Shown here piece by piece: positions 233-49,222 of a DNA stretch of 64,000 bases. The stretch is from Rebecca billardiae RCC1528. Its lineage: Eukaryota > Protista > Haptophyta. Position numbers and translations under genes: made by a program. Below the pieces are notes generated by a model. That model made no database searches. It had not been told where the DNA came from and was given only the letters and a program-made list of their open reading frames with translations. The first letter of the stretch is position 1, and every line of letters starts with the position of its first letter. The stretch lies in contig OZ251248.1 of the NCBI GenBank assembly GCA_965240325.2, forward strand, positions 124,001 through 188,000. The letters are read 5' to 3'.

Positions 233-2477
233 TCAGTGCCCGTCGGCCGCCTGTGTGTACTGCTGCTTGCTCTTCTCGACCCAGCACACGTACTTGGCGA
301 CCTGCGTCGGGTTGAGGATGGTGCGCAGCCCGTTGAGCACGACATGCTGGTTCTGCAGGTGCTCTTCCACCTGCCAGCCACGTCAAGGGGTGGGTAGGGT
401 AGGGTTGGCGGCGGCGGTTAGGGTTTGAGGCATGCGTGGTGTGGCGTGCGGGAAAGCGTCGGCTCGACGGCACACGGCAGCCGAGCGCGCGGCCCGACCA
501 ACCCAACCAACCCTACCCCCTGCCCTACCTTTGCGCGCAGCTCCTCGACCAGCTTGGCGCACGTGACGAGGATCTCGCGGTCGCCGTGCACGTGCGCGCG
601 GTGCTGCGCGAGCGCCTCGAGCTGCGGCGGCGAGAGGCTGAGCTCGGCCGCGATCACGTCGAGCATGTGAGAGCCCACGGACGGGCGGCGCACGCGCGCG
701 GAGGAGGAGTCGGTGGCGTCGGCGGCGGCGGCGGCTGCGGGCTGCTGCGCCTCTGGCGCCGCGCCGCCGCCGGCCGCTGCCGCCGCCGCCGCCGCGTCGG
801 AGCCGTCCGCGCCGCCGTTCGCAGCAGCGCCCGCGTCCGCCGCGGCCGGCGCGGCCGGCGGCTCCGTCACCTGCGGCCAGCCGGGGGCGGAAACCGCAAA
901 AGGAGAACAAATGCAAAAATGCCGAGCGGGCGGGGAGCGCGGAAGGGCGGCGCGCGCGCGGGCGGGAGAGAAGTCGGGTGAGAGCGCGCGCGCGGCGCGG
1001 CAGCCAGCCGCGCCCTGCCGCGCGGCAGGCCAGACGCGGAGCCCGCCGCACTGGCCCCCGCGCGCTCGGCCCGCGCCCCGCCCGGTTGGGTCGCGCACGG
1101 GGAACGGCGGCATGCAGGCGCGCGAGTGACGCGGCCGAGGGCGGGGCCGCGCGCTCGGCCGTGCGAGATGCGCGCGCTGCGCCGAGTGCGCGGCAGCCCT
1201 TCCGCCCCGCAGCAGCTCGCACTCCCTCCCGCCCCACGACCCGCCTCCCCGCTGGCCCGATGCCCCCGATGCCCCCGAGGCCCCTTGCGTGTGCGTGTGC
1301 GTGTGCGTGTGCGTGTGCGTGTGCGTGTGCACTGCACGCCGTGGCATGCAACGGGGTAAGGCGTGCGCGCGCGCGGGTGTGTGTGCTCGTGCGTACCCTA
1401 CCCCTAACCCTACCCCCTAACCCTACCCCCTACCCCGACCCCTAGGTGCGTGCGCGTACCCCTTTGGAGAAGGCGAGTGTGACGAGCGCGGACGGCTCGA
1501 GGATCTCCTCGATGATGTCGAGGTAGCCCAGCATCACCGTCTCGCGCTGCCGCTTCGAGCCCACGTACCTACGCGCGCGAGGGGCGGGGGCGGAGGGGGC
1601 GGGCGGGGGGCCGGTCGGTCGCTCCGGCTCAGCCGAGGCTGGCGGCGCGGCGGCGCGGCGGATGCAGCGCATGTGCGCACGGGCACGCGCGCGCGCACTT
1701 CTCGATCAGCGCGTTCGTCTCGGGCTGCAGCTGCTCCACCGAGCGGCGGCGCAACAGCGTCTCCATCGCGGACAGCTGCGACGCACGCTCCGACTCAGAG
1801 GTGGGCGGCGCGGCCTCGGCCGCGGGGAGCGTGGGCGCGGCGGCGGCGCCGGAGCCGGCGAGCGCGCGCTTGTGCGCGAGCTTCGCCTTCGCCGCGTCGA
1901 TGCGCGCCTGCGCCCGCGCCGCGCGGGCCATCGCCGGCGTGTGCCGCGCGCGCCGCCGCGGTCGGCCGAGGCAGGCGGCGCGCGGCGCGCGCCGGCGCGC
2001 GCGCGCGCGCCACGCGCCGCGGCCGCGCGCGTGGACGGGGCATGGGGCGCACGCCGGCGCGGACGGGCGTCGGCGCGCGGCGCGCACCTGCATCTGCGCC
2101 ACGTCGTCCTCGAGCCCCTGCACGTACGACTTGTGCCGCCGGCGCGCGTCGCGCGCCGCCTGCGCCTTGCGCGCCATCCGCAGCTGCACCTTTGCGTCCT
2201 TCTTGCCCTCGCCGCCGGCGGAGGCGTCGGCGTGCGCGTCGGCGCCGCCGCCGCCCAGCTCGAGGTCGAGGTTGATCCCGCCCCCCGCCGACTCGAGCCC
2301 GGCGAGCAGCCCGTACGGGTCGTCCTTGAGCCCGCCGCCGCCGTCGCCGCTCAGCCCCTTGGCCGAGTCCATCGCCTTCTCGCCCGCGGCCCAGAGGAAG
2401 CATGAGGCGAGGTCGTCGTCGACGAACTCCTGGACCTTGAGCAGGTCGGCCAGCTCGAGCTGCTCCGAGCCGCCCAT
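233..2477 (-). CDS. bZIP transcription factor (multi-exon)
   Basis: Basic region and zipper RMARKAQAARDARRRHKSYVQGLEDDVAQMQ; C-terminal LRTILNPTQVAKYVCWVEK. GT-AG exons 2477-2088, 1907-1699, 1568-1460, 870-529, 370-233 join in frame. An extra exon within 871-1459 is not excluded. Confidence 0.8.
1286..1330. repeat. (TGCGTG)n microsatellite in a bZIP intron
   Basis: About 7.5 perfect copies read directly. Confidence 0.9.
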
Positions 2478-2857
2478 GCTGCCCCGCCCCGAGCGCCGCG
2501 CCGCGCGGCTCGTGCACCGACGGCCGCGCTGCGACGCTGCTCGCGCGCGGCGGCCCTGCTGGATCCGCCGAGCCGGCTGGCGGGCGCTCGGCAGCGGCAG
2601 CCCTGCGCGCGCGCGCGAAAGCCGACAAGCCGAAAAGGCGTGAACGGCGGAAAAGAAAAGCCGCCTTGCGCTTGCTTGCGCTTTTCGCCCAGCGCAGGCT
2701 GCGGGGCCTTTTCCGCCCGGGAATCCGACGCCCCGGACTGGCCAAAAAAGATCCGGTGCGGGTGCGGCCGCGCGCGCGGCGAACTCTCGCGTGACTCGCC
2801 AGCCGTCCGGCGTCGCGCCGACCGCCGATCAGTCGATCACCGCTCTCGGCCGCCGCC

Positions 2858-5433
2858 ATGCCCGCGCTGACGTTGATTGCGTGCGCCGCGCTGGCGTTCG
2901 CGCGCCCGGCGCCGTCGGCGACGCGCGGCGGCTCGCGGGCCGGCGCGTGCGCGCGCACCGCCGTGCGCGCCGCCGCGCCCCGCCCCGACGTGCGCGAGCG
3001 CGACGCCGCCGCGCGCCGCGAGCTGCTGCGCGCGGGCGCCGGGTTTGCGCTCGCGTCCGCGGCGCAGCTCGGCTGCGCGCCGCCGCCGCCGGCGTGGGCG
3101 GCGAGCTCGCTGAACAAGGCGTCGAGCGCGGGGTCGGCGGTGAACAAGGACCCCGACTCCCTCCTCCGCTACGGCCTGCCCATCTCCCAGCCCGACATCC
3201 GCTCGATCCAGAAGGAGCTCGAGGAGTCGAAGCCAAACTGCTTGAAGGCGCTCTGGTCCAAGGCGCTGGGCAACGTGCAGAAGGCGCGCGGCGTGCTCAA
3301 GGCGAAGGGGGAGAAGATCCAGGCCGCCGTCGCGCCCGAGCGCAAGGCCGACGCCGCCGACGCCGCCGCCAAGCTCGGCAGCGCGATGGACGCGCTCGAG
3401 GTGGCCATCACCAAGCTGGACGCGGTGCGCGCAACCCTACCCCCAACCCTACCCCCAACCCTGCCCTGCCCCCAACCCTACGCTGCTTCGTCGCCGCGCC
3501 CGGAACACGCTTGTACTGGCCGTTTGCGCGCGTGCCCGCATGCACACACCGCGCGCCGGGCGCGCCGGGCGCGCCGCGCCGCGCCACTGACTGCCGGCGC
3601 CGCGCCGCGCGCCCGCGCGCCGCGCGCACGCGCGCGCACCGCCTGCAGGATGCGGCGGTGGCCGCGCAGACGCAGGCGGTGGGGCTGGTTGGCGCGATCG
3701 AGGAGGCGATGGTGGCGGGATTCCCGTATCAGGTGCGGCGCGGGGCGCCGCGCGCCTAAGGCGCGGGCGCGCGGGCTGGCGGCGCGGGCGCGTGGGCGCG
3801 GGCGTTGGCGCGCGGCAGCGCGGCGCGGTTGCGCAGCCAGCCGGGGTGTGCGCGGCGCGGCTGCCGGCGGGTGGGCAGATTGCGATCTCCGCCGCGGAGG
3901 TCGTGGCAGGGCCGGCTAGGCGGGCTGGGCCGCGCGCCCGGAGCCGGCCGGCCGTTGGGCCGCGCCGCGCTGCGTGCCGAGCGCGCGCCACGGTGCCGCC
4001 GCGTGTGGGCGTGTGGCGGTGCCCTGCGCGTGAGGCCGCGCGCCGCGCGCGCGCCGGGCGGCGGGGCGGCTGGCCGAGCGGCGCGCGGCCGAGCGCTCTC
4101 ACACGCGCGCGAGCCCCGCCGCCTCTCGCCCACGCCACGCCCCCCGGACTCTCCCCTTCCCGGACTCCCACCCCGGACTCTCCCCGCAGATTCCGGACGA
4201 GTTCGACGCGCTGCCGCGGCTGCTCGGCCGCGCGAGCGTTGAGCTTGTGCTCTCGCGCGGGCCCAGGTCGGAGGAGAAGACGTTCGACGTGGGCGGTGCG
4301 CGCGCGGGGCCGCGCCCCGCCCCCGCCATCGTTCCGGGGAGGACGGCGGGGGGGTCGAGCACGGCTGGAGCGAGGGCGGCGCCGGTGCCCGTGTTGACGC
4401 GCGCACCGCGCACCGCCCACCGCCCACCTCCGCGCCCGCGCCCGCGCCCGCCGCCGCGCTGCGCGCCCGCGCTCTCCCCCCGCCCACGCCGGGCCCCGGC
4501 AGGCGAGTTGGCGCAGACCATCCGCGTGGTGCTGCTGCTCGACGGGTACAACGCGCCGCTCACCGCGGGCAACTTCGTCGACCTCGTCAAGAAGGGCTTC
4601 TACACCGGCATGGAGATTCAGCGCTCAGACGGTGAGGGGATGTAGGGGTTGGGTTTTGGGTTTTGGGTTAGGGTGAGGGTTAGGGTTAGGGCGCCCCGGA
4701 GCGCCCCGCCTGCCCCGCGCCCGCCGCGTGACCGCTTGAGCCGCCGCGGCACCCGCGCGCCCGCACCCCCTACCGTACCCTACCCTACCCTGCCCTGCGC
4801 CGTGCAGGCTTTGTGGTGCAGACGGGCGACCCGCGCGGCATCGAGCCGTCCGACGAGTCCGCGCCCAACGGCTACCAAGTCGACGGCAAGACGCGCAACG
4901 TGCCGCTCGAAGTGTTCCCAGTCGGCGCCAAGGCGCCTGTGTACGGCGCCACATTTGACGAGGAGGGCTACGGAGGCGCCGCCGCGACGATCCCGTTCCA
5001 GGTGCGGGCTGGGGGGCAGGGCTGGGGGCAGGGTGAGGATGGCGCGGGCGGGCGAGAGCAGGCGAGCGCGGAGAGCGGGAGGGCGGGCGGGCGGCGCGAG
5101 CGCCGGCGGCGGACGCGCCCCGCACCGCGCGCGGCGCGCGCATGCACGCTCACGCGCCGCGCCTCCGCCGCGCGCGCGCGCACGCCCCAGGCGTACGGCG
5201 CGCTCGGCATGGCGCGCGAGGAGTACTCGGCGGACTCGGCGTCGTCGCAGTGGTTCTGGCTGCTCTTCGACTCGGACCTCACGCCCGCGGGCAAGAACCT
5301 GCTCGACGGCCGTTACGCGTGCTTCGGTTACACCATCGACGGGCAGGACCAGCTGCGTGCTGTCAAGGTGGGCGACGTGATCAAGAGCGCCAAGCTGCTC
5401 TCCGGCGGCGACAAGCTGGTCGCGGGCAAGTAA
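2858..5433 (+). CDS. CYP38: Thylakoid lumen cyclophilin, CYP38/TLP40-like
   Basis: Motifs [62 protein letters not shown]-terminal signal peptide ending ALA-F. Exons 2858-3424, 3649-3732, 4190-4295, 4503-4631, 4808-5001, 5191-5433. Confidence 0.9.
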
Positions 5434-5654
5434 GCGGCGGGGGCGCGCGAGCGAGGCGTCGCGGCTGCCCGCCCACGCGCTCGGGACTCTGCCATCGTCA
5501 GCACTCTCGGAGCGAGCGCGATCGATTAGGCGGCCGCGCCACTTAGTCCGTGACGACGGGTGGCGTCCGACCGCCCGCGCTGGGCGTCGCGCAGACCGCG
5601 CTGACAGCGCAGTAGCGCCATATATCATCAGCTACTATATATATATATATACAT

Positions 5655-16954: not shown

Positions 16955-18867
16955 ATGTGGCTCGGCGCGCTCTCGCGGCACCTGCCGCTCCGCGGCCTCA
17001 CGACCTCCGCGCTCTCCGCCGCGGGCGCGCGGCGCTCCGCCGCGCTCTCGTCCGCGGGCGCGTCGACGATGCGCATGGCCGGCCCGATCGCCGGCCGCGC
17101 GGCCGCGGCCGCCGGCCTCGCGGTGGTCTCGGGCGGGCTGATCTCGGGCCCGTCGTTCCTCCCGTCGGACGGCGACTCGCTCGGGCTGAGCATCTCGCAG
17201 GCCGACTTCTACCGCCGCTACAACCTGCGCTCGCTGCTGGGCAAGGGCACGTTTGGCGAGGTGTGGATGGCGGAGGACGAGCAGACCGGCCGGTACGTCG
17301 CGGTGAAGAAGATCGTGTACGACCCGGAGCTGGCGGAGCAGGTGCGCACGGAGGTGCGCGCGATGCACGCGTGCGGCGGGCACAAGCACATCGTCGAGCT
17401 CCTCGAGGTCTACGACGTCGCCGCCGGGTTTGGTGGCAAGCGGCACTGGTGCCTCGTGATGGAGTTGGCGGAGGGCGGCGGGCTGTTCGACCACCTGGTC
17501 GCGCAGGGCGCGTACTCGGAGCGGCAGGCGGCGGAGCTGATGCAGCAGTTCGCCCGCGCGCTCTACCACCTGCACTCCAAGGGCATCGTCCACCGCGACA
17601 TCAAGCCCGAGAACCTCGTGCTGATGCGCGAGGACGTGCTCAAGCTGATCGACTTCGGGACGGCGATCGTGCTCGGCCCGGACGAGGAGGTGATGGCGGG
17701 CGGGCGGTGCGGCACGACGGGGTACTGGGCGCCGGAGCAGATCGAGGCGAAGACCTCGTACGGCCAGCCCGTCGACCTCTGGGCCGCCGGCATCGTCCTG
17801 TATATCCTGCTCTCCGGCTTCCACCCGTTTGATACGGAGGGACGCGCGTCCGTCACCGAGATCAAGCGCGCGATGCTCGCGGGCGAGTTCAACTTTGACG
17901 GCTCGGAGTGGCGGAACGTGTCGGAGCCGGCGAAGGAGCTGGTGCGCTCGCTGCTCGAGCGCGACCCGGACAAGCGCTGCACCGCCGCCGAGCTCGTCAA
18001 CCACCCGTGGATCCGCGGCGAGCGCGTGTCGGACACGCCGCTGCCGGAGACGCACGAGCGACTGCGCGCCTACACCAAGGTAGGGGTAGGGGTAGGGGTA
18101 GGGGTAGGGGTAGGGGTAGGGGTAGGGGTGGGGCGACGGGGCTGCGCGCGTACGCCGAGGGCGGGGACGGGGAGGGTGGGCGGCGGAGGGGTAGGGTAGG
18201 GCGCGTGCGTGCCGCGTGCAGAGGCGGCCGTGCTCCCCCCGCCCGCCCCGCGCGCGCTGCCGCCCCCCGCCCCTCCGCCCCCCCTCTGCCCCAACCCGAA
18301 CCCCCAACCCTACCCTAACCTAACCCCTGCCGCGCAGGCGCGGCACGCGTTCCACGGCTCGCTGCTGCTCGGCATCCTGATGCACCAGATCCGGGCGGCG
18401 AAGGAGGCGCGCGCGGTGGCGGCGCAGGCGGCGCGCGACCCCGCCGCGCCGCCGCCGCCGCCCGAGCCGGCGCGCAAGCCACGCCCAGGCTTCCTCCGCT
18501 CGCGCGTGTCGGAGTTCGACATCCCGGCCGAGGGCGGCGGCGCGGCGTTCGGCGGCGCCGAGTTCGACGCGCTGCGGATGGGCTACGAGCTCTTCGACGT
18601 GGACGGCAAGGGGTACATCACCGACTCGGACCTGCGGCGCGTGTGCGCAGACCTCGGGTACTCGCTCTCAGAGCGGGAGCTGCAGCACGTGATGGCGGTG
18701 CTGGCGCCCACCATGTTCACAAACATGGCGGCGGCGTCGCACAAGGTGCGCGTGGGCGGCGGGCGCGGCCGGCACGCGCCCGCCGCCGCGGGCGCGGACG
18801 GCGGCGACGGCGGCGACGGCGGCGCGGCGCAGCGCGAGCAGCAGCCCGACGCCGGCGGCCCCGACAC

Positions 18868-18900
<33 letters not shown>

Positions 18901-21900
18901 CGCGGCCGCGCATGCCGAGCATCAGCGCACCATCACCTTCGACTCGTACATGCGCGCGCTCAACCGATCGTTTGCCAAGCGCTTCCGCGAGGGCGACACC
19001 ATCTTCAAGCAGGGCGACGAGGTGGACGGCTTCTACATCCTGACCAAGGGACAGGTGCGTGGGCGTGCCCGCGCGTGCCGCGCGGGGTGGCGCGTGCGTG
19101 GCGCGCGCGGCGGGCGGGTGGCGCGGGCGCGGCCCTGTGCTGCGCTCGCGCGGCGCCGGGGCGGCGGGGCGGCGGGGCGGCGGGGCGCGGGGCGCGCCGA
19201 CCGACGACCGACGGTGCTGGGTGTGGGCCGCTGCCGCTGCCGCGGCCTCGGCCTCGGCTTGGGCCGCACGGCGGCACCGCTGCCACTCAGCCGCGGCCGC
19301 GTGCCCCCGCTGACGCCCGCACGGCCGCGCGCCCGCCCGCTGCGCGCCGCCTCCGCCGCGCTCGCGCTCGCTCCGCCTCGCCACCCGCGCACGCACGCGC
19401 GCGCGCACACACACACGCTCGCAGGTGCTCGTGCTCGTGCAGTCGCGCAGCGGGCCGGAGCAGGAGGTGGCGCGGCTCGGCCCCGGCGACTTCTTCGGCG
19501 AGACGGGCATCCTCGAGGGCCGTCCCGTGCGCTCCTCCTCCGTCGTCTGCGCCACCACCCCCGTCGAGGTCTTGTTCATGGACAAGGCCGAGTTCTCCGC
19601 TCTGGTGTCGTCGGACGCGACCGGGCTGCTGGCGCGCGGGATGGAGGCGCGCGCGGAGGCGCGGCAGAACGCGCGCATGTCCAAGCTGCTCTCCGCGCTG
19701 CAGGCCTCGCCCTCACAGACCGTACGCTCCTTCCCCGCGGGCTCGACCATCTACAGCCAGGGCGAGGGCGCGGAGGAGCTGTACCAGTGCATCGACGGCC
19801 GTCTCACGCAGTCGTACACAACCGACACGGGCGAGTCGATCGGGCTCGGGAGGATCCACCGCGGCTCCTTCTTCGGGTACGACGCGATGATCTCGGGCGT
19901 GCACGACACCACCGTGGTCGCCGCCACCGACGCCACCGTCGCCATCCTCCCCTTTGCCGCGCTGCGCCCCGCGCTGGAGGGTTCCGAGTGGCTGCAGTCC
20001 GCGGTACGCGTGCGCGCGGACAGGCTGCACGACGTGGTCGCGTCGGTCGGGCAGCGCGCCAAGGCGGGGCACGCCGAGTCGCAGATCTACGCGACGATGG
20101 CCAAGGTCGCCGCGAGGTGCGACGCGACGCGCGTGGCCGAGCGCCACGCGTGGCCGCGCCGCGCGCTCGGCTGCGCGTGGCCGCGCCGCGCGCACGGACC
20201 GGACCGCCCACCGCCCACCCGCGCTGCGCGCGCGCGCGCGTGTTTGCGTAGCGATGGCGCGGTCGCGCGTGCGCGCGCGCTCGGCCCGCGCTCTCCGGCG
20301 CGAGCGCCGCTCACGCCGCGCTGCCCTCCCCCTGTGTGCCCACCTCTGCGCGCGCGCGCGCCGCCGCCGCCGCCGCCGCCGCTCCGCCCCCGCCCGAACC
20401 CGGCGCGGCCTGCACGTGCGCTCTCGGCGGCCATGCTGACGCGGCGGCCATGCTGACGCGGCGGCCATGCTGACGCGGCGGCCATGCTGACGCGGCGGCC
20501 ATGCTGCTGGGCAGGCAGGGGATGGCGGTGGACACGGCGGCGTGGGAGGGCGTGGTGACGGCGATGGAGCCGGTCGAGCTGGCGCAGGACGAGGTCCTCT
20601 TCCGGCAGGGGGACAGGCCCACCCACGTCTATCTCATCGACGAGGGAGCGCTCAAGGTCCGACCCGCGCGCGCGAGCGCGGGCGGGCGGGCGCGCGCGGT
20701 CGCAGCCGCGCACGCGCGCGGCACGCGCGCGCCGCCGCCCTTGTTTGTCATGCTCCCTCGTGCCCCCATCCCCACCCACAAACAACCCAACCGATGCCTC
20801 GGCGCCGTGCCGGCTGCGTGCAGCTGCACTACAAGACCGAGAGCGGCGCGGAGAACGTGCTCGCCGAGCTCGGCCCTGGAGACCACTTCGGCGAGACCGC
20901 CTTCATCGACGGCCGCTCGCGGCGCAACACCACGGTCTCGTGCATCGCGCAGCGGTGTGCGCGCGCGGCGCGTGATGGCGCGGAGGGCGCGGAGGGCGCG
21001 CGGGGGGCGCGCGCGGCGCGGGCGCCGCGCGCGCCGCGCGCGGCGCCGAGGCGCGCGGCGGCGGCTCTGCTGCGCGTGTGCGCGTGCGGTGGTGTGTGCC
21101 ACGCGCGGCTGCCACCCTGCCAACACCACCGCGGCGGCAGCGCGCGTCAGCGTACTGCGGGCTGCGTGCGGTGTGCGTCATGTGCGTGCCATGTGTGCAT
21201 GTGCGCGTGTGCGTGTTTTGCGCGTGTGCGTGTGTGTGCGTGCGTGTGCGCGTGTCACGCGTGTGAGCGCGGCCCAGCACGCGCTGCCCGAGTACCACCG
21301 CCTAGGGTTAGGGTTAGGGTTAGGAGTTAGGGTGAGGGTGAGGGTGAGGGCGCGCTGCCCGAGCCCGTGCTCACCGCCCTCGCGCTGCCCTCGCGCGCCC
21401 CCCGCCGCGCGCGCGCGCGCCCGTAGCTGCAAGCTCCGCCGCCTCGAGCGCGGCGCGTGGGAGAAGGCCCTCGCCTCCTCCCCGCAGCTCAACGAGGCGG
21501 TGCTCGAGGCGGCGGCCTCGCGCTCACGCTCGCGGCTCCGGACCATCATCGAGGCGGCGGCGCGCAGCGGGCTGGCAGAGACGATCAAGCTGGGCAAGGG
21601 CGAGGCGGCGTTCACGCAGGTGCGCGGCGGTGCGCCGCCCCGCGCGCCGCGGCCGCGCCGGCCGCACGGCGGCCATGCTGCCAGCCGTCTGCTCCGCTGG
21701 AAACGGCGGCCATGCTGGCAGCCATGGCTCTGGAGGGCGGCCATGCTGGCAGCCATGGCTCTGGAGGGCGCGCGCGCGCGGCGGCCCGGCCGCTGCCCGC
21801 CCCCGCCGCCCAAGCGTGCCGCCGCCCAGCGCCGTGCGCGCCGTGCGCGCCGTGCCCGGCGCTCACGCCCGGCGCCCCGCCGCTCCTCTCACCGCTCCCC

Positions 21901-22321: not shown

Positions 22322-22624
22322 CGGCCGCGGCGTGGCTTGGGAGGATGCAGCGGGTCGATCGGGCGGCCATGCTGATGATGCGCGCGAATAAAAAATAGAG
22401 GGTCATGCACGCTCAATTCTCAATTCAAAATGGGCCCCCGACGACAGACAGGGTGGTGGTGCGCTTTGCGCTGCGCGGCACACGGCACAGCACCCATGGC
22501 GGCGGCCCGGCTGTGACGCCGAGCGCGCACGGCATCACTCGCTCCGGCGGCGGAGCAGCCCGCCGCCCCGCCCACCGCGCGCGCGCGCGGCGCACCCTAG
22601 CGGGGCGCGCCGACTCGCCGCGCC

Positions 22625-26097: not shown

Positions 26098-26337
26098 CGG
26101 CGGCGGCGGAGCGGGCGGCCGTAGTCGCGAAGCCGCCTCACGTCGGTCGTCGGCCGCGACACACACGGCGACTGCGGAGTGCGGCACCGGGTCGTCGTCA
26201 GCAGTCTCACTCAGTCACCGCCGACTGCCCGCCCGGGTGCCGGGACCGCCGCCTAGTGGGATCAGAGATCCGCGATGACCGTTACACTCCCGAGTGACAC
26301 AATCACTCCGCCCGCGACGAAACTTAATAATATAAGC

Positions 26338-28960
<2,623 letters not shown>

Positions 28961-40627: not shown

Positions 40628-42682
40628 ATGCCGAAGAAGCGGCACCTGCACCCGCGCCCGCTGCTCGACCAGTCGGCGCTGCTCGCCTTCTTCAGGGAGC
40701 GCGGCTGGAAGGAGCCCAGCGCGCGCCGCCTCGTCGGCCACTTTGTGCGCGACGGCACGCGCGTCGCCGAGGTCGACGGACTGCCGCGCGACGCGTACGA
40801 GGAGCTGGGCGCGCACTTCGCCGAGATGACGAGCGTGGTCGAGTCGGAGTCGTGGTCGTCCGACGGCTCGACCACCAAGCTCCTCGTCCGCCTCGCCGAC
40901 GGCCACCGCATCGAGACGGTCGTGATCCGCAACCATCACGGCGGCAGCGCGCGCTCCGACGCGACCGTGTGCGTCTCGAGCCAGGTGGGCTGCCAGATGG
41001 GCTGCACGTTCTGCGCGACGGGCACGATGGGGCTCCTCGCCAACCTCTCCGCCGGCGAGATCCTCGAGCAGCTCGTGCACGCCCGCCGCTACGAGCGCGT
41101 GCGCGCTGTCGTGTTCATGGGGATGGGTGAACCGTTGGCCAACTGCGACGCCGTCCTCGAGGCCATCGAGGGCTCCATCGACACGCAGCGCTTCGGCGTG
41201 AGTCCGGATCGGTGCGCGCGTGCGCGCGGGGTGTGGAGCGTCCGCGTGGCGCGCGGGGGGTCGTGGCGGCGTGTGCGGCCTGTCGGGCGCGCGCGCACGC
41301 GCGTCCCCCCCCCGGGACGCAGGCGGCCGCTGCGGCTGTGCTGTTGAAGCGCACCGCACCGCCCGCCGTCGGCCGCCCGCCCGCCCGCCTGCCCGCCTGC
41401 CTGCGCCGCACGTCGCGCGCCGCGCGCGCCCGCGGCCGGCGAGCGGCCGGGGTGCACCCACCCGACGTCGCCTCGCCGCGCTTTTCACGCTCCGCCCCGT
41501 GCACCCGCGGCCGCCAGCGTGAGCCTCTCAACCCTAACCCCTAACCCTAACCCTAACCCTAACCCCTAACCCCTAACCCCTAACCCTAACCCCCGCGGCC
41601 GCGCAGCGTGAGTCTCTCGACTGTCGGGGTGACGCCGCGGCTGCGCCAGCTGGCCGAGCGCGCGCCGCACGTGCGCCTAGCCTTCTCGCTGCACGCGCCG
41701 ACGCAGCCGCTGCGCGAGCAGATTGTCCCGTCCGCGCGCGCGTACCCGCTGCCCGAGCTGATGGACGCGGGTGCGCGCGCCGGCCGCGCCGCGCGCGTGC
41801 GCGCGTGCGCGGCCGCGTGCGCGCCGTAGCCCACCGATAGGGCCGAGGGCCGCCGCCTTTTTTTGGCTCCGAATGATTTTGGGGGTTGATTCTGACGCAC
41901 GCGCGCCCCCCGAGCGCACTGCGCGCGCCGCCGCGGCCGGCGCCGCGTGTGCAGTGTGCGAGCACGCCAGTGCGACGGGCCGCGCGACCCTCATCGAGTA
42001 CGTGCTGATCCGCGGCGTGAACGACAGCGCGCACACGGCGCACGAGTGCGGCAAGCTGCTCAGTGGGACCCTCGGCGCGCGCCGCGCGCTCCTCAACCTG
42101 ATCCCTTACAACCACACGCCAGTACCACACGAGTACGAGCCGCCCGCGGCCGAGGCGGTGGCGGAGTTTGCTCGGATCGTGCACAAGGAGTACGGGCTGC
42201 AGGTGACGGTGCGCAAGGAGAAGGGGTCCGAGTGCGCGGCGGCGTGCGGCCAGCTCGTCGTCGACTCGGCGGCGGCGGCGGGCAAGCGCGGCGCGGCCGG
42301 CGCGGCCGGCGCGGCCGGCGCGGCCGGCGGCGGCGCTCGCGTCGACAGCCTCGACCTCGAAGATTTGGCGAACACGGGCGGCCGCGTGGGGGGCGGCGTG
42401 CGCGCGGGCGGCGCGCGGCAGAGGCCGGCCGCCGGCGCCAGGCAGGGCCGCGCCGGCGGCGGCGCCGCCGAGGCCAGGCGAAAGCCCCAGCCATCGTCGC
42501 CGCCCGCGGCGGCGGCGGCGCGGTCGTCGGCCGCGCTGCCGGCAGCGGCCGGCGCCCTCCTCGGCCTCCTCGGTCAGAACCGCGCGCTCTTCGTGCTGCT
42601 CTGCGTGCTGAGCGCGGTGCTTATTTACAACTGGTTCGTTGCGCGCGCGTTCGGCGTGCTCGTCCGGACGGCGTTCGGATGA
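40628..42682 (+). CDS. RlmN/Cfr-family radical SAM RNA methyltransferase with C-terminal TM helix
   Basis: [49 protein letters not shown]. Exons 40628-41211, 41607-41770, 41955-42682. Confidence 0.92.
41529..41594 (+). repeat. (CCCTAA/CCCCTAA)n telomere-like array just before a 3' splice site
   Basis: About 9-10 units ending 12 nt before the end of the acceptor AG at 41606. Confidence 0.95.
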
Positions 42683-42955
42683 GTCGCACGCTGTTGCACG
42701 CTGCTCCGCGTGCGCGCCTCAGGCGCGCACGGTCACTGATGTAGCTCGCGCGACAGCCGTCGGCGCACCACAGACACCGGCCGATGCCCCAGCTCCAAAG
42801 AAAAGAAGAATGCGAAAAAGGAGAAAAGGCGGGACCCGCGCATTTCGCATTTTTTCGTGCCCGGAAATTCCGCCGCCACGTGTCGGCCGATCGCGGCCGC
42901 CGCCGCGCGGCGCTCGGCGCGTTTTCGGTCACAGGTCAACCGCGCCGCGCACGCC

Positions 42956-45900
42956 ATGGCGAACGCGCCGCTCAAGGCGCCGAGCGGGCTGAATGGCTTC
43001 ATCATGCGCGTGCTGCTGTGCATCTACGTGCTGCGCATGATGCCCGTCATGCAGCTCGCGCTCAAGGGCCAGATCGCCGCCCGCCGCCTCGGCCAGGTGA
43101 TGGACAAGCGCGCGATGGTCGCGCCGCCGAGCACGCCGCCGCCGACCGTCTCGGAGCTGATCGGCCCGGCGGGCGAGATGGCGCACGAGCTCGCGAGCCT
43201 GCGCGACGTGCCGTGGCTCGTCGAGCTCCTCGCGCAGGACGAGCGCGGCGCCGTCGTCGTCAGCGTCACCGCCGAGTACGTCGCGGTCTCGCGCGTGACG
43301 CCCTGGCTCGCGCGCCGCACCGTCTTCAACTGCTCGGCGAGCCGGTGGCAGCTGGAGGTCGTGGAGCTGCCGACGGAGGGCGGCGCGCCGCCGAGCGCGC
43401 CGCCCAAGGCACCGCCCGCCGTCGCCGCGCCGCCCGCGCCGTCCATCGCCGCGCCGCCATCGCCCGGCCCGGCCGCGGCCGCCGCCGCGCCGTCGGACGG
43501 CGACGGCGCGGCCGGCGGCGCCGCGGCCAACGCCTCCGACGCGGACTCCGCGTCGGCGTCGGGCGCGCGGCAGCTGGTGCGCGCGGCGGAGCTCGTCGAG
43601 CACCCGCCCGCGCCGCCGCCCGCGCCGCCGCCGCCGCCCGAGTACCTCGACACCGTCCTGCGTCTCAAGAATTTCCGCACCAAAAAAAGCCATTTAATTC
43701 TGATGCCGAACGCAGAGGCGGCGCGGCTGCGCGCGCTGCACCGCCGCGCGGTGGTGCGGCGGCAGGTGATCCAGATCGACCGCGACGTGAGGCGCACGCA
43801 GCTAGGCCGCGGCGGCCTGCAGGTGCGCGCCGCGCCGCGCGTGGGCGCTCGGTCGGCGCGGCCGCGGCCGCGCGCGCGCGCGGTGTGTCGCATGCCCCGC
43901 GCACGGATCCCACCGCGCGCGTGACACGGCGTGCGCCGGGTGTGCCCCCTCGCGCGCGCGCGCGCGTTCGCAGGCGCGCATCGTGCGCGAGGTGCTCGTC
44001 GCCTACGCCCTGCAGGCGCCCCTCGCCGAGCGGTACGTCCAGGGAAACCACCTGCTCGCGGTCGCGCTCACGCAGGCCTTTTTCGGGTCCGGTGTTCTCG
44101 AGGGCGCGCCCGGACTGCTGCCGGAGGGCGCGGCGGCGGGCGTGGTCGGCGGCGCCGCCGGCTCGGAGCCCGCCGCCGCCGCCGAGCCGCCGCCCGCCGG
44201 CTGGGCCGCGGCGGGCACGTCGCCGTCCGCGTACCCGCACCTGGACGGCTCGCACCTCGAGCAGCTGCGCGCGTGCTTCGTCAGCGCCGGACTTTTCCCG
44301 GACTCGGGCCCGACGGCGCGGCAGCTCGGCCGGCTGGCGGCGAGCGCGGGCGGCGCGGCGGAGGCGGAGGCGTGGGCGGCCGCGCAGGTGCTCGGCGCGT
44401 TCAAGTACGTCATGGTCACGCAGGTGCGTGCGCGCGCGCGCGGCGAGGCGCGGTGGCGCGGCGCGCGGCGCGCGGCCAGTGCGCCGCGCGGCGCGTGCGC
44501 TGAACGGCGCGGCGGGTGCGCCGCGCGGCTGGCCGGGTGCGCGGCGGGTGGGCGCTGCCGAGCGGATTGGCCGGCGGAGCGCGGCGCCACGCGCGCGCGC
44601 GCACGGCACGCGCACGCGCGCGCCCTGTGCTCACGCCGCGTGCACACGCGCGCGCCCCGCCGCGCGGAATGGCCGGGACGCGCGCGCGCCGCGCCGCGCC
44701 TCGCGCCTCGGCAGGGCTTGGCCGCGCTGTGCCCCGGCGGGAGCGACGCCGCGTTCGGCGTGGCCGGCGGCGGCGTGGCCGCGCCGTCGCCCGCGTGCGT
44801 GCGCGCGCTGCTCAGCGCCATGCTCGCGCGGACGCAGGGCCCGCTGGCGCGCGCGCTCGCCACACCCGCCGCGGAGCCGGCGGTGGCGGACGCGGACGAC
44901 AGCGGCGCGGCGGGCGGCGCGCCCGCGCACGCGCACGGCGACGGCGGCGACGGCGGCTGTGACGGCTGCGCGCAGCCCGCGCCCGGCGCAGCCGCCGCCG
45001 CAGCCGCGGAGACGGCCGCGGCGGCCGCCGCGGGCGGTGCGGAGGCGGCGTCGGCGGGGGCGCCTGCCACGGTCGACGCCGGCGCCGGCACTGACGCCCC
45101 GGCCGGCGCCGGCATGCAGTTTGGCCCGATCGCGGCGGCCGTGCTGGAGCTGCTCGAGCCGCTCAGCCTCGCGTCGCTGCTCACCATCCCGCCCGCGCCG
45201 CCCGCGTCGGCCACGGCGGCGATGGGCGCCGTCGAGCTGGGCGCGGGCGCGGCGGGCTGCGCCGTCGCCTACCCCACGACGGCGGAGCAGGTGTGTGCGT
45301 GCGCACGCGCGCACCATCTCTCCGCCGCGCGTGCCGCGGCGTGCGCGCGCGGCGCGGAGCCGTGAACCCTAACCCTAACCCTACCCCTCGCGACCTGCCC
45401 CGCCCCGCCTGCGGGCCCCGCCCACCACCGCCGCCCCCACCGCCCGGACGCGCGTGCGCAGGACCACTTCGTCGCCGTGTGGCGCGCCTTCTTGGCCGCG
45501 GACGGCGCGCCCTCCGCTCGCTCGCTGCTGCTCAAGCTGGTCGGAGCGCGCGCTCTCGGCTACTGCCAGGAGGTGCGGCAGCGGGGCGGGGCACGCGGGA
45601 AGGGTGTAGGGTAGGGCTAGGGTGGCTAGGGGCTGCTGCCAGCAGGTTAGGGGCGGGGTGGGCTCAGCGGGGGGCGCGGTGGGGGCCGGCGTGTGCGGAG
45701 AGGGTACTGCGGGCGCACAGCACAGCACAGTGCGTGCGTGTGCGCAGGCGTGCGTGCGCGCGCGCCGTCCGGAGTAGGTGGCGAGGGGACGGGGGTGCCA
45801 CCAGCGCGGACGCCCCGACCCTGCGGCTGCGCGAGCGCACGGCTGGGGCGCGCGCCCCGCCACGCGCCGCGCGGTGCGTCACGAGGCGGCCGGACCGCGC

Positions 45901-46508
45901 TCTCACAGCGCGCCGCCCTCCGCGCGCGCGCCGCCCCGGCCACCCCGCGCGCGTGCGTGCGTGCGGCCGGCGATCTCAGGAGTCCGGAGCTCGCAGCTGG
46001 TACTCGCCCCCGGACTCGTGGCTGCTGCACAAGGCCGGTATCTTCGATCTGGACTGGTGCGCGCACCGCACGCGCGAGCAAGCCGGCGCGGCGCGCGGTG
46101 GGAGGGCGCGCCCGGCCGTGCGCGCGCGAGTGCAGCGTGCGATGGGGCGCTGGGCCGCGGTGGCGCTAGCTAACCGACAGCGTGCGACGCGCGCGCGCCG
46201 CGCACCGCAGGTCGGCGGCGCTGGACGAGGCGGCGAGTGCGTCCGAGGCGGGCGCAGGCAGCAGCACATCGGGCGGCGCGGCCGGCTCCAAGCTCGGTGG
46301 CGCGCCGCGGCCCGGGCAGAGCAGTGCGCTGGCCGGCCCCGCGGCGCGCGCCGCGGGCGGTGCGGCGCGCGCCGCGTCGGACGAGCAGCTTGGCGATCTG
46401 AGCGCGCGCTTTGCGTCCGGCTGGAAAGTCTCCCGGCTCGAGATGGCGCTGCTGCGTACGCGCCTCGCGACGACCAACAAGAAGCGGGTGGCAGCGCCCG
46501 CCGCGTGA
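42956..46508 (+). CDS. Divergent TBC (Rab-GAP) domain protein
   Basis: IDRDVRRT (IxxDxxR) and YVQG (YxQ) catalytic fingers. Exons 42956-43822, 43974-44423, 44715-45290, 45462-45572, 45980-46056, 46211-46508. Confidence 0.7.
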
Positions 46509-47065: not shown

Positions 47066-49222
47066 TCATTCGATGATCCTGATGCCGTGGTCACTCAAGT
47101 CCGGCGGCGTCGGCAGTGCGCCCTCGCCCGCCGCCTGGCCGCCGATGCGCGCCATCGCAGCGCCGTGCCCCGAGCGGAAGAGCTCGCCCGTGCGCGTCAG
47201 GTAGATGGCGCGCGCGCGGCGCATACGCTCGGCGGTGGCGGCGTCCGCGGCGGAGCGGCCCGCCCCGGCCGCCTGCTCCGAGCGGCTGCGCGCGCCGCCG
47301 CCCGAGTCGGCACCGCCGGGTGGCGCCGGCAGCTCCGCGTCCGCCGGCGGCGCCACGAGGTGCAGCGCGCGCAGCTCCGCGCCGTCGTGCTCGCCGTCGA
47401 AGCCGCCGTAGGTGTGGACAGTGCCGCCGAGCGCGCACATTGCGACGCACGCGCGCCCGCCCGCGCCCGACGCGCCGCGCGCGGGCTGCGCCGTGCCCAC
47501 GGCGTGCCACAGGGCGACGGGAGCGCTCACGGGGGAGGCGACCGGTGCGCTCAGGGCGGAGGCGTGCGGTGCGCTGCTCAGGGCGGAGGCATCGGCAGCG
47601 CCGGCTGCGGGCGCGCGGGTGGAGCGCGGCGCTGGGCGCGCGGAGCCAGCGTCGTCGTCGATGGCGGCCGGCTCAGCCGTGGGCGCCGCCGAGCCCGGCG
47701 CGGCGGCCGGCGCCGCCACCGCCGCCGTCACCAGGTACGCACTGCCCTCGCAGAATTCAAACTCCGCGTCCACGCCGCCGAAGATCAACAGGCCCAGGCC
47801 CAGCGGCAGCGCGGCCGCGCACGCGTCAATGCGCGCGCTCAGTGCTGGCGCGCCGTCGGCTGCGGGCGTCGGCGCGTCCGCGGCCAGGGCCGTCCCCTCA
47901 CGCTCGCGTCCGAGCGGCCCGGACGCGCCCGCGGGCCCACCGCCCGCCCGAGCCGGCGCGCGCGCCGCTTGCAGCGTGGCCGCCGGTGCGAAGGCGCACG
48001 GCGCGAGCCCGCGCGGCGCGGCGCCGCCGGCCGCGCCGACGCTCCGAAGCTGCGACCAGCTGAAGGTGCTCAGGTCGAGGACACTCACGTCCTGCTGAGT
48101 AAGGAGGGAGCCGTCCTGCCCGCCAACCACCACCAGCGCGCCCGCCGAGCGAGGCCCCGCGCCCGCCGTGCCCGCAGCAAGCTGCACGCCGCCGCCGCCG
48201 CCACCGCCGCTGTCAGCCCAGCCGCCGCCGCCGCCGCCGCCGTCCACCACAGCGCCGCAGTGGTGCGCTCGCACGACCGCCTGCCCGCGCGTCTCGTGCC
48301 GGAGCCACGCGCCGCGCACGGTGGCGTCGCGCGCGCCCGCGCCGCCGAGGCCGCCCGACGGCGCCTCCAGCGCGAGCGACCACACGTCGCCGCGCGGCCC
48401 GTCCGCGCCCATGCCGCCGTGCAGCAGCAGACGGCCGGCCTCCGGCCAGTAGACGCCCACTGCAGAGGAGCAAGGGTTAGGGCTAGGGTTAGGGTTAGGG
48501 CTAGGGCAGGGCGAGGCGTCTGGGGCGGCGGCGGTGTCGTGCGTCGCGGCGTCGACGCGGAGCCAGCGCCCCGCCCCAGCGCCCGCGGCCGCGCCCCCCG
48601 CGCTCCACACCAGCACCCACGCGTCAGCGTGCAGCACGCCGCCCTCGCCCGCGCCGCCAAAGATCAGCATGGCCGCCGCGCGGCGCGCGCCGTCCGCGCG
48701 CGCGAGCGGGGGGTAGGCGCACGCGACGTGGTAGCAGCGGGCCTCGGGCTGCGGCTCGGTGGCGCCGGTCACGACCACCGCCCAGCTCACCGCGCCCCCC
48801 GCCGCGCCGTCCAGCGTGCCCACCCGCGCGTCGGCGAGCGTGCCGCCGTGCTCGCTAATTCGGCCGCCGAAAACACAGAGCTGCGTCGGCCCCAGCGGGA
48901 CCAGACTCGCGCCCGAGCGCCCGCCGGGGCTCGCGGGGCCGCTCGACTTGCATGCGCGCCAGGGGCGCGCCGAGACGCGCAGGCCGTGCGCACGCACCTC
49001 GCGCACCGCGCGAAACACGCCGCTGTCCGTCGGCGCGCGCGCGGGCCAGAGAGCGGCGTAGCGCCTCGCGAGCGCGAGCGCGGCCGCGGCGCGCGCGGCG
49101 GAGCTCGCGGCGGCGAGCGCGAGCACGGGCGTGTAGTCGGCGCACGTCGCGTGCGCGGGCGGCGCGGATGGCAGAAGCGCCGCCGCGATGTGCGCCAAGA
49201 GCTCAGGCGGGAGCGAGTCCAT
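47066..49222 (-). CDS. F-box/Kelch-repeat protein
   Basis: MDSLPPELLAHIAAAL (F-box-like); six Kelch GG motifs VFGG, IFGG, LHGG, VVGG, IFGG, TYGG. Confidence 0.82.
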   Translation of the reverse strand: MDSLPPELLAHIAAALLPSAPPAHATCADYTPVLALAAASSAARAAAALALARRYAALWPARAPTDSGVFRAVREVRAHGLRVSARPWRACKSSGPASPGGRSGASLVPLGPTQLCVFGGRISEHGGTLADARVGTLDGAAGGAVSWAVVVTGATEPQPEARCYHVACAYPPLARADGARRAAAMLIFGGAGEGGVLHADAWVLVWSAGGAAAGAGAGRWLRVDAATHDTAAAPDASPCPSPNPNPSPNPCSSAVGVYWPEAGRLLLHGGMGADGPRGDVWSLALEAPSGGLGGAGARDATVRGAWLRHETRGQAVVRAHHCGAVVDGGGGGGGWADSGGGGGGGVQLAAGTAGAGPRSAGALVVVGGQDGSLLTQQDVSVLDLSTFSWSQLRSVGAAGGAAPRGLAPCAFAPAATLQAARAPARAGGGPAGASGPLGREREGTALAADAPTPAADGAPALSARIDACAAALPLGLGLLIFGGVDAEFEFCEGSAYLVTAAVAAPAAAPGSAAPTAEPAAIDDDAGSARPAPRSTRAPAAGAADASALSSAPHASALSAPVASPVSAPVALWHAVGTAQPARGASGAGGRACVAMCALGGTVHTYGGFDGEHDGAELRALHLVAPPADAELPAPPGGADSGGGARSRSEQAAGAGRSAADAATAERMRRARAIYLTRTGELFRSGHGAAMARIGGQAAGEGALPTPPDLSDHGIRIIE
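48473..48511. repeat. TTAGGG/CTAGGG array inside the F-box/Kelch ORF
   Basis: agggttagggctagggttagggttagggctagggcaggg; encodes PCPSPNPNPSPNP on the minus strand. Confidence 0.92.

What the first reader, a model, noticed from the sequence alone, without database searches (positions are those of the whole stretch)
371..48511. Telomere-like arrays confined to transcribed DNA and polarised around splice sites
Seen: TTAGGG/TAGGG(G)-like arrays occur in about 10 predicted introns of 6 genes and in one exon; I saw no comparable array in the intergenic spacers. In sense orientation, G-strand arrays sit near 5' splice sites (about 500-528 and 1394-1446 on minus; 4632-4691; 18080-18128; 45601-45652). 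C-strand arrays sit toward 3' splice sites (387-426 on minus; 4765-4796; 18289-18328; 23884-23950; 41529-41594; mid-intron 45365-45387). Exceptions are 3433-3480 and 21303-21350. Established: CCCTAAC contains the branch-point consensus CTAAC, GTAGGG can act as a donor, and UAGGG/G-runs are bound by hnRNP A1/H-type proteins. Inference: telomerase-like insertions at breaks in transcribed genes may be retained where they supply splicing signals that these introns, which mostly lack T-rich pyrimidine tracts, otherwise miss. This would be a telomere-repeat splicing code or intron-remodelling system.
Basis: partly seen in the sequence, partly recalled or inferred. Interest (0 to 1): 0.85.

Follow-up and report, generated by a model that had tools for sequence, protein, structure and literature searches.

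The report
Telomere-type repeats at intron ends
In this very GC-rich, probably haptophyte, genome short telomere-type repeats lie almost only in introns, next to the splice sites; at least one was inserted at a DNA break and now probably serves as the branch site, but the strand polarity is shared by all intron repeats and is not a telomere-specific code.

Summary
Fifteen TTAGGG/TAGGG(G)-like arrays are present. Fourteen lie in 10 introns of 6 genes, one lies in an exon, and none lies in 19.5 kb of intergenic DNA (P about 3e-6; second-order Markov (composition-matched) simulated sequences give 0 arrays). G-strand arrays cluster at 5' splice sites and C-strand arrays 9-26 nt before 3' splice sites (p=0.009).

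For:
- Array 41529-41594 sits between two copies of a 28-nt target that spans an acceptor and the exon start, which marks an insertion at a staggered break. Arrays 21303-21350 and 18080-18133 have weaker 13- and 19-nt flank repeats.
- In all 5 introns with CCCTAA arrays, the array holds the only CTNAC branch-site motif. Of the other introns, 17 of 23 have their own (p about 0.005).
- All 8 introns of two genes, including four that carry arrays, are absent from relatives.

Against a telomere-specific "code":
- 41 non-telomeric intron repeats show the same G-5'/C-3' polarity (rho -0.59), as do introns without arrays.
- CCCTAC-type arrays carry no branch motif.
- Two real exceptions exist, and most introns have no array.
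- No RNA data could be obtained.

Best reading: these are interstitial telomeric insertions plus slippage, filtered by compatibility with splicing and in places taken over as splice signals. Other windows of this genome were noted earlier by the scan for the same pattern.

The parts
387..426 (-). Array a. C-type on the sense strand. It ends 16 nt before the acceptor of intron 528->371 and holds that intron's only CTAAC.
493..528 (-). Array h. G-type on the sense strand. It begins with the donor GTAGGG of intron 528->371.
371..528 (-). Intron of the bZIP/DOG1-like gene, between LRAK and VEEH. It is absent from the relative's contig L001, where this coding sequence is continuous.
1394..1446 (-). 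Array i. G-type on the sense strand, 13 nt after the donor of intron 1459->871. That intron is also absent from L001.
3433..3480 (+). Array j. C-type (a CCCTACCCCCAA-like 12-mer), 8 nt after the donor of CYP38 intron 3425-3648. This is a true exception to the polarity. The intron has its own CTGAC 58 nt before the acceptor.
4632..4691 (+). Array b. G-type, starting at donor GTGAGG of CYP38 intron 4632-4807. Its inner units are perfect TTAGGG.
4765..4796 (+). Array k. C-type made of CCCTAC units, so it has no CTNAC motif. It ends 11 nt before the acceptor of intron 4632-4807.
18080..18133 (+). Array c. (GTAGGG)8, giving tandem in-frame donors at the start of kinase-gene intron 18080-18337. It is flanked by a 19-nt direct repeat (18062-18080 and 18142-18160, 16 of 19 identical) whose left copy is the end of the exon.
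18188..18201 (+). Array d. Two TAGGG units in the middle of the intron.
18291..18328 (+). Array l. C-type, ending 9 nt before the acceptor. It holds the only two CTAAC motifs of intron 18080-18337.
21303..21350 (+). Array e. (TTAGGG)4(TGAGGG)3, G-type, in the 3' part of intron 20955-21426 but upstream of the predicted CTCAC branch site (53 nt before the acceptor). It is flanked by an exact 13-nt direct repeat (21280-21292 and 21351-21363), with 10 nt of filler.
23884..23950 (+). Array m. C-type, CCCTAA/CCCCCTAA units, ending 26 nt before acceptor 23976. It holds five CTAAC motifs. The donor of this intron is uncertain (23738 GC or 23798 GT).
41529..41594 (+). Array n. About ten CCCTAA/CCCCTAA units, ending 12 nt before the acceptor (41604-41606) of RlmN-like intron 41212-41606. 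It holds nine CTAAC motifs.
41505..41532 (+). Copy 1 of the target duplication: the old intron end, CAG, and the first 15 nt of the exon (still reads VSLST). It now lies inside the intron.
41593..41621 (+). Copy 2 of the target duplication. It contains the acceptor in use and the start of exon 2 (VSLSTVGV), confirmed by RlmN homologues.
45365..45387 (+). Array o. (CCCTAA)2CCCTA in the middle of intron 45291-45461. It holds that intron's only CTAAC motifs.
45601..45652 (+). Array f. G-type TAGGG units, 28 nt after donor 45573 of predicted intron 45573-45996.
48473..48511 (-). Array g. C-type on the sense strand, inside the 790-aa Kelch ORF. It is read as PSPNPNPSPNP in a loop between blade strands. 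No in-frame GT donor is available to splice it out.
20425..20506 (+). Non-telomeric analogue: a 17-nt unit carrying CTGAC, repeated about 5 times at the 3' end of intron 20117-20514. It gives four tandem branch-site motifs 24-75 nt before the acceptor.

Best explanation
These are short interstitial telomere-type repeats, together with slippage-grown telomere-like microsatellites, that survive inside genes only where the splicing machinery tolerates or uses them.

Shown:
- The arrays are real, intron-bound and polar.
- Array n lies between two copies of a 28-nt target that spans an acceptor and an exon start.
- The downstream copy carries the acceptor that matches the conserved protein.

Inferred origin:
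- A staggered break in or next to an exon was repaired with added telomeric repeats, by telomerase or by capture of telomeric DNA.
- The duplicated acceptor kept the gene intact.
- The upstream copy and the array became intron.

Inferred filter:
- Introns here use a CT(C/G/A)AC branch site 19-111 nt upstream of the acceptor, followed by a long C-rich tract free of AG.
- TTAGGG carries AG in every unit. A G-strand array in that tract would create early acceptors and would be lost.
- A C-strand array is AG-free and C-rich and brings tandem CTAAC branch sites, so it is tolerated and can take over the branch-site role.
- Near the 5' splice site, G-rich repeats fit the general G-rich intron start, and GTAGGG/GTGAGG units can themselves act as donors.
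- Upstream of the branch site and away from the donor, either orientation is neutral (arrays e, d, o).

The polarity is therefore the general G-5'/C-3' architecture of introns in this genome, not a code specific to telomere repeats.
For: - Arrays far exceed chance: 10 clusters against 0 in Markov simulations.
- Distribution: 14 in introns, 1 in an exon, 0 in 19.5 kb of intergenic DNA.
- Target duplication around n: Smith-Waterman score 20, reached by 0.2% of 1500 random intron sites. Array e has 13/13 and array c 16/19. Only 1 of 41 non-telomeric intron repeats scores 11 or more, and none 13 or more.
- RlmN homologues align without a gap from ...SPDR (41211) to VSLSTVGV (41607 onward). So the copy-2 acceptor is the one in use, and copy 1 still encodes VSLST with synonymous differences.
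- Branch motif: 17 of 23 introns without a CCCTAA array have CTNAC 12-130 nt upstream of the acceptor, where chance gives about 0.15 per intron. None of the 5 introns with CCCTAA arrays has one outside the array, and all have one inside. Fisher p about 0.005.
- AG-free tracts are long, typically about 100 nt.
- General polarity: introns without arrays have G/C skew +0.12 in the first sixth and -0.17 to -0.27 in the last third. 41 non-telomeric repeats give Spearman -0.59, p = 4e-5.
- Insertion of telomeric repeats at breaks, sometimes with target duplication and filler, is documented in mammals (PMC7215372, PMC2246262).
Against: - No RNA evidence: introns, the acceptors in use and the branch points are all predicted.
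- Only one target duplication is individually significant. Taken together, 3 of 15 arrays at p of 0.1 or less is not compelling.
- Many units are not TTAGGG (TAGGGG, TAGGG, CCCTAC, 12- and 13-mers). Part of the set may have grown in place by slippage and never involved telomerase.
- Random break repair does not explain why intergenic DNA has no array. That needs an extra assumption, such as transcription-linked breaks or faster loss outside genes.
- The organism's true telomere repeat was not verified here.
- Array j is a C-type array next to a donor and is tolerated.
Confidence: 0.58

Rival explanations
1. A dedicated telomere-repeat splicing code. The repeats are selected as such. UAGGG and G-runs are bound by hnRNP-like proteins at the 5' end, and CCCUAA acts as branch site at the 3' end. 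Together they make up for missing pyrimidine tracts and remodel introns.
For: - Arrays cluster tightly at both splice sites.
- CCCTAA arrays hold the only CTNAC motif in 5 of 5 introns.
- T-rich tracts are absent.
- Other windows of this genome were noted for the same pattern (unchecked notes).
Against: - The same polarity holds for 41 non-telomeric repeats and for introns without arrays.
- 19 of 29 introns have no array yet show normal-looking signals.
- CCCTAC arrays have no branch motif.
- There are two real exceptions.
- No protein-binding or splicing data exist.
Confidence: 0.1
2. Growth in place only. The arrays arose by replication slippage and small tandem duplications seeded by the splice signals themselves (donor GTAGGG, branch site CTAAC) in strongly G/C-skewed introns. 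Telomerase played no part, and the likeness to telomeres is coincidental.
For: - (GTAGGG)8 is a perfect multiplication of the donor hexamer.
- A non-telomeric 17-mer carrying CTGAC is likewise multiplied 5 times.
- The units are heterogeneous.
- Introns are full of tandem repeats.
- Restriction to introns follows naturally from this origin.
Against: - The 28-nt and 13-nt flank repeats enclose the array plus unrelated filler, and what follows the two copies differs. This is not a tandem duplication.
- Arrays e, n, m, o and g are true TTAGGG/CCCTAA units at 50% GC in introns of about 82% GC.
- Array e is not next to any splice signal.
Confidence: 0.2
3. Introns born from breaks healed on both sides. 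Telomerase extends both 3' ends of a break in an exon, and the ends rejoin with filler between them. On either strand this reads G-array...C-array. The G-array supplies the donor and the C-array the branch site, so the whole insert is spliced out as a new intron.
For: - Three introns (528->371, 4632-4807, 18080-18337) have exactly this G...C order, with the G-array starting at the donor.
- The order is symmetric between strands, so it needs no selection.
- Single arrays are only 4:2 polar.
- Two of the three paired-array introns (528->371 and 4632-4807) are absent from relatives, with no codon lost. No close relative was found for the kinase gene that holds the third.
- Head-to-head telomeric stretches at repaired breaks are reported in horse (PMC7215372).
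Against: - 9-16 nt of non-telomeric sequence always separate the C-array from the acceptor.
- Gain cannot be told from loss with only two taxa.
- Introns of the same genes that have no array are equally absent from the relatives.
- The outer units are not canonical.
- There are only three cases.
Confidence: 0.08
4. Copies of an introner-like or MITE-like mobile element with telomere-like terminal inverted repeats.
For: - The G-array and C-array are mutually complementary and pair end to end in predicted folds.
- Flank repeats resemble target-site duplications.
Against: - With the arrays masked, the introns share nothing but low-complexity GC matches.
- Array units, lengths and flank-repeat lengths (13, 19, 28 nt) differ from case to case.
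Confidence: 0.03

Closest known systems
Short interstitial telomeric sequences inserted during double-strand-break repair in primates, rodents and horse (Nergadze et al. 2007, PMC2246262; Santagostino et al. 2020, PMC7215372)
   Same: - Short (20-70 bp) telomere-type arrays at internal sites.
- Some carry a target-site duplication from a staggered break plus a few filler nucleotides, as for arrays n and e.
- They avoid exons.
   Different: - In human, the share lying in introns fits random insertion, and no splicing role is shown. The authors leave that question open.
- Here there are none in intergenic DNA.
- Here the arrays abut splice sites with matched strand.
- One array was rescued by a duplicated acceptor.
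- The units are often variant.
Intron gain or extension through break repair with short direct repeats (Daphnia model of Li et al. 2009; recalled from memory; mechanism listed in PMC13685798)
   Same: - Direct repeats flank inserted intron sequence.
- The duplicated sequence provides a splice site.
- Intron turnover between relatives is high.
   Different: - The inserted DNA here is telomeric repeat.
- In the one clear case an existing intron was extended at the expense of 15 nt of duplicated exon. It was not created from nothing.
Complementary (GT)n/(AC)n repeats that bridge intron ends in teleost fish (Lin et al. 2016; recalled from memory)
   Same: Repeats at the 5' and 3' ends of an intron are complementary to each other. 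The predicted folds pair them and bring the splice sites together.
   Different: - The repeat type differs.
- Only one of three folds beats shuffled controls (z = -4.9; the others -0.2 and -0.3).
- There are no functional data.
Tandem UACUAAC repeats that bind SF1 in the Gomafu/MIAT RNA (PMC3116199)
   Same: (CCCUAA)n gives tandem CUAAC, the core of the branch-site sequence that SF1 recognises.
   Different: - In Gomafu the repeats sit in an exon of a non-coding RNA and sequester SF1.
- Here they sit where a working branch site is expected.
- Binding was not tested.
Plant telo-boxes (PMC3022908)
   Same: - Telomere-unit motifs inside transcribed regions.
- An origin by telomerase acting on transcription-linked 3' ends has been proposed.
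   Different: Telo-boxes are single units enriched in 5' UTRs and promoters of translation-related genes, where they act on transcription. Here the repeats are arrays at intron ends in unrelated genes.

Membership tests
Short interstitial telomeric sequence (break-repair insertion) | The units are identical to the organism's own telomere repeat. | tested here: inconclusive
   Perfect TTAGGG/CCCTAA units occur in arrays e, n, m, o, g and the inner part of b. Arrays c, a, d, f, k, j and i use TAGGGG, TAGGG, CCCTAC or 12-13-mers. The telomere repeat itself is not in the window. Only unchecked scan notes say that chromosome ends carry (TTAGGG)n.
Short interstitial telomeric sequence (break-repair insertion) | Signs of insertion at the site: target duplication, filler nucleotides, or a deletion relative to an empty site. 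| tested here: met
   A 28-nt duplication surrounds array n (p = 0.002). A 13/13 duplication plus 10 nt of filler surrounds e. A 16/19 duplication surrounds c. Among non-telomeric repeats only 1 of 41 scores 11 or more. The other 12 arrays show nothing.
Short interstitial telomeric sequence (break-repair insertion) | An orthologous empty site in a relative. | tested here: inconclusive
   Relatives L001 and L083 lack the whole introns that hold arrays a, h, i, j, b and k. They lack the array-free introns of the same genes as well, so this is not an array-only empty site.
Short interstitial telomeric sequence (break-repair insertion) | Distribution consistent with random insertion, as found in human. 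| tested here: not met
   There are 0 arrays in 19.5 kb of intergenic DNA, against 14 in about 7.7 kb of intron.
Introner / MITE-derived introns | A multi-copy family with shared internal sequence. | tested here: not met
   blastn of 29 introns with the arrays masked finds only low-complexity GC matches. This covers the window only.
Introner / MITE-derived introns | A target-site duplication of fixed length. | tested here: not met
   The flank repeats are 13, 19 and 28 nt long, and 12 arrays have none.
Branch-site element (yUnAy / CUAAC) | The motif lies at a working distance upstream of the acceptor, with no AG in between. | tested here: met
   The CTAAC nearest the acceptor lies 14-83 nt upstream in the 5 introns with CCCTAA arrays. 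The range in other introns is 19-111 nt. The arrays are AG-free.
Branch-site element (yUnAy / CUAAC) | The lariat actually forms at that adenosine. | not testable with these tools
   No RNA run was listed.
Intron-bridging complementary repeats | The 5' and 3' repeats pair with each other more stably than composition predicts. | tested here: inconclusive
   All three minimum-free-energy folds pair the arrays. The z-scores are -0.20, -0.32 and -4.88.
Plant-type telo-box | A single unit in the 5' UTR or promoter of translation-related genes. | tested here: not met
   These are arrays in internal introns of kinase, CYP38, bZIP-like and RlmN-like genes.

The most novel reading that the evidence does not exclude
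In this haptophyte, telomerase-repaired breaks in transcribed exons are a regular source of new or extended introns. The G-strand repeat provides the donor and the C-strand repeat the branch site. Healing on both sides gives the G...C order on either strand without selection. GC-biased decay of old arrays then produces the generic G-rich-5'/C-rich-3' intron seen throughout the genome.
Probability: 0.12. Interest if true: 0.85.

Novelty: new variant of a known kind. Interest (0 to 1): 0.58.

Why it matters
Internal telomeric repeats are known as scars of break repair, but no role in splicing has been shown for them, and papers on the mammalian cases leave that question open.

This window contains a case that can be read directly. 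A telomeric insertion hit the start of an exon. The gene was saved by a duplicated acceptor, and correct splicing now seems to need the insert's own CTAAC units.

If RNA data confirm this, it links three things:
- telomerase-type repair;
- intron growth;
- the origin of branch sites, in a lineage whose introns turn over fast (8 of 8 introns differ from relatives).

It would make repair-driven intron evolution testable in a cultivable alga.

The finding also documents the intron grammar of an extremely GC-rich genome:
- GTGCG donors;
- CT(C/G)AC branch sites that lie far upstream of the acceptor;
- long C-rich tracts free of AG.

Tried and rejected
- **RNA evidence.** The look-up of sequencing runs listed no run, so read laying could not be used.
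- **Close relatives by protein search.** The Kelch ORF gave no hit. Kinase exon 1 gave nothing above 56% identity.
- **Metagenome scan with RlmN-like exon 1.** It gave only relatives at 50% identity or less. These were useless for an empty site but did fix the exon junction.
- **Exact-sequence look-ups.** Two single-exon window proteins were not on record. The source genome therefore seems absent from the protein collection, and the organism stays unproven. Diacronema lutheri-like is inferred from 72-73% GC and gene content.
- **Other CYP38 homologues.** P0126 and P0130 lie on short contigs with an uninterrupted reading frame, possibly transcripts, and P0136 was not on record, so they did not help to tell intron gain from loss.
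- **Array i flank repeat.** It spans the donor and looked suggestive by eye, but it is not above the controls (score 7, p about 0.45). Dropped.
- **Kelch array as an intron end.** Rejected. There is no in-frame GT donor, and splicing would remove a blade strand.
- **Introner family.** Rejected.
- **Hairpin selection.** Not supported in 2 of 3 introns.
- **Literature.** Searches found no report of telomeric repeats acting as branch sites or donors. Subscription journals are not covered.

Full report
**What the window is.** The window has 72.4% GC and holds about 22 eukaryotic genes. They are recognisable by a very strong GC3/GC2 periodicity. Pfam finds CYP38, profilin, RAP/FAST-like, a kinase with EF-hand and cNMP domains, an RlmN-type radical-SAM enzyme, Kelch, GT29, sulfotransferase and others. 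The GC content and gene content fit a pavlovophyte haptophyte such as Diacronema lutheri, whose genome is 73.25% GC and 43.5 Mb (PMC8379373). Identity was not proven: exact-protein look-ups found nothing. No RNA run was listed, so every intron below is a prediction. The predictions rest on coding periodicity, frame-consistent GT-AG pairs, a splice-site matrix built from 14 clear cases and, for three genes, homologous proteins.

Ten clusters of at least three TAGGG or CCCTA units are found, against zero in second-order Markov simulations. Fourteen arrays lie in 10 predicted introns of 6 genes. One (48473-48511) is read in frame as PSPNPNPSPNP in a loop of a Kelch blade; no in-frame GT donor could remove it, and removal would take out a blade strand. 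None lies in 19.5 kb of intergenic DNA (65% GC), against about 7.7 kb of intron. If the 10 intron loci fell at random in non-coding DNA, the probability would be 0.283^10, about 3e-6.

On the sense strand:
- G-type arrays have their centres at 0.07-0.17 of intron length (five arrays), 0.44 and 0.79.
- C-type arrays have their centres at 0.72-0.89 (five arrays), 0.50 and 0.14 (Mann-Whitney p = 0.009).
- Five G-type arrays start 0-27 nt from the donor, and five C-type arrays end 9-26 nt before the acceptor.

The CYP38 homologue P0123 fixes intron 1 of that gene as 3425-3648. Array 3433-3480 is therefore a true C-type exception, 8 nt after a donor. Array 21303-21350 is a true G-type array in the 3' part of its intron.

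**The polarity is not specific to telomere-like repeats.** Introns without arrays have a G/C skew of +0.12 in the first sixth and -0.17 to -0.27 in the last third. I took 41 non-telomeric tandem repeats inside the same introns as a control. Their sense-strand G/C skew falls with position (Spearman -0.59, p = 4e-5). Strongly G-rich repeats split 5:0 for the 5' half, and strongly C-rich repeats split 8:2 for the 3' half. The introns have a common grammar:
- GTGCG-type donors and GCGCAG acceptors;
- first 40 nt with 49% G;
- last 40 nt with 51% C and only 10% T.

**Branch sites.** A CT[ACG]AC motif lies 12-130 nt upstream of the acceptor in 17 of 23 introns that have no CCCTAA array. There is usually exactly one, at 19-111 nt, where chance would give about 0.15 per intron. 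AG-free tracts before the acceptor are long, typically about 100 nt. In all five introns that carry CCCTAA-type arrays (a, l, m, n, o) no such motif exists outside the array, while the array supplies one to nine CTAAC motifs (Fisher p about 0.005). CCCTAC-type arrays (k, j, part of i) contain no yUnAy motif. A non-telomeric 17-mer carrying CTGAC is repeated five times at the end of intron 20117-20514, so multiplied branch sites are not limited to telomere units.

**Evidence of insertion.** Array 41529-41594 lies between two copies of a 28-nt segment (41505-41532 and 41593-41621). The Smith-Waterman score is 20, reached by 0.2% of 1500 random intron sites. The segment comprises the last 13-14 nt of the intron, including the CAG, and the first 15 nt of the exon. 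RlmN homologues align without a gap from ...SPDR (ending 41211) to VSLSTVGV (from 41607). So the downstream copy holds the acceptor in use, and the upstream copy still encodes VSLST with synonymous differences. What follows the two copies differs, so this is an insertion with target duplication and not a tandem duplication.

By the established rule that the first AG downstream of the branch point is used, a branch point upstream of copy 1 would select the CAG of copy 1. That would put 89 nt, including the array, into the mRNA. Correct splicing therefore needs a branch point between the two CAGs, and the only candidates there are the CTAAC units of the array. This step is inference.

Array 21303-21350 has an exact 13-nt flank repeat plus 10 nt of filler (control p about 0.04). 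Array 18080-18133 has a 19-nt repeat, 16 of 19 identical, whose left copy is the end of the exon (p about 0.08). Of the 41 non-telomeric repeats only one scores 11 or more, and none 13 or more. The other twelve arrays show no flank repeat.

**Comparison with relatives.**
- A metagenome contig (L001, 67% GC) carries a homologue of the bZIP/DOG1-like gene (40-73% identical over the conserved stretches). Its coding sequence runs uninterrupted across all three intron sites of the window gene, including LRAK|VEEH, where intron 528->371 with arrays h and a sits. It has one private intron about 25 codons upstream.
- A genomic Logan contig (L083, 64% GC) carries a CYP38 homologue (53% identical over exon 1, 45-82% in the later exons). 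It lacks all five window introns, including those holding arrays j, b and k, and has one private intron.
- Neither contig has any telomere-like array.

Intron turnover is therefore high. With only two taxa, gain cannot be told from loss, and the array-free introns are equally absent from the relatives.

**Other tests.**
- The G- and C-arrays of the three doubly flanked introns pair end to end in predicted folds. Only one fold is more stable than shuffles (z = -0.2, -0.3, -4.9).
- With the arrays masked, the introns share only low-complexity matches, so there is no introner family in the window.

**Explanation.** I read the arrays as interstitial telomeric insertions of the kind documented at repaired breaks in mammals, sometimes with target duplication and filler (PMC7215372, PMC2246262). 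They are mixed with arrays that grew by slippage. Both kinds are filtered by splicing:
- G-strand units carry AG and cannot sit in the long AG-free tract between branch site and acceptor.
- C-strand units are AG-free and C-rich and bring CTAAC, so they are tolerated there and can become the branch site.
- G-rich units fit the G-rich intron start and can serve as donors (arrays h, c and perhaps b).
- Upstream of the branch site and away from the donor, either strand is neutral (arrays e, d, o).

This accounts for the polarity, for both mid-intron cases and for one of the two exceptions. Array j remains unexplained. The filter does not by itself explain the empty intergenic DNA. Transcription-linked breakage, or an in-place origin for many of the arrays, are the candidate reasons.

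**A bolder reading is not excluded.** A break healed by telomerase on both sides and then rejoined reads G-array...C-array on either strand. Three introns have exactly this form, with the donor inside the G-array. I rate this reading at about 0.1.

**Relation to earlier notes.** Other windows of this genome were noted for sense-oriented CCCTAA arrays at intron 3' ends, and one follow-up judged that the orientation was not yet beyond chance. This window gives a larger sample, a control class, the branch-motif exclusivity and one documented insertion.

Noticed in passing
window 20426-20506, 21668-21748, 22362-22374, 48665-48677: The 13-mer GGCGGCCATGCTG occurs 10 times exactly, where 0.8 matches are expected even with one mismatch allowed. 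All copies are on the sense strand of their gene: two introns and the 3' flank of the kinase gene, and the Kelch coding region. Its function is unknown.
   Followed up: partly
window 235-2477 (-) and 2858-5433 (+), compared with L001:5001-6199 and L083:611-2001: All 8 introns of two window genes are absent from homologues in related GC-rich contigs. Each of those contigs has one private intron at a different position, so intron turnover in this lineage is high.
   Followed up: partly
29 predicted introns across the window, e.g. 30618-30810 and 32110-32386: The intron grammar here is GTGCG donors, GCGCAG acceptors, a single CT(C/G)AC motif 19-111 nt upstream of the acceptor, and AG-free tracts of about 100 nt. 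There is almost no T-rich tract.
   Followed up: partly
window 871-930 (-): The 3' end of intron 1459->871 is unusual for this window. It has a T-rich tract (TTTTTGCATTTGTTCTCCTTTTGCGGTTTCC) instead of the usual C-rich one.
   Followed up: no
window about 26250-26400, 28800-28950, 54150-54300, 55950-56250: There are short, extremely AT-rich islands (10-35% GC at each codon phase) inside otherwise 60-65% GC intergenic spacers.
   Followed up: no
window 18142-18201: The intronic copy of the exon end (it reads LRAYAE, against LRAYTK in the exon) is followed by a degenerate 6-nt-periodic G4 tract that ends in two TAGGG units. This could be a decayed older copy of the donor array.
   Followed up: no
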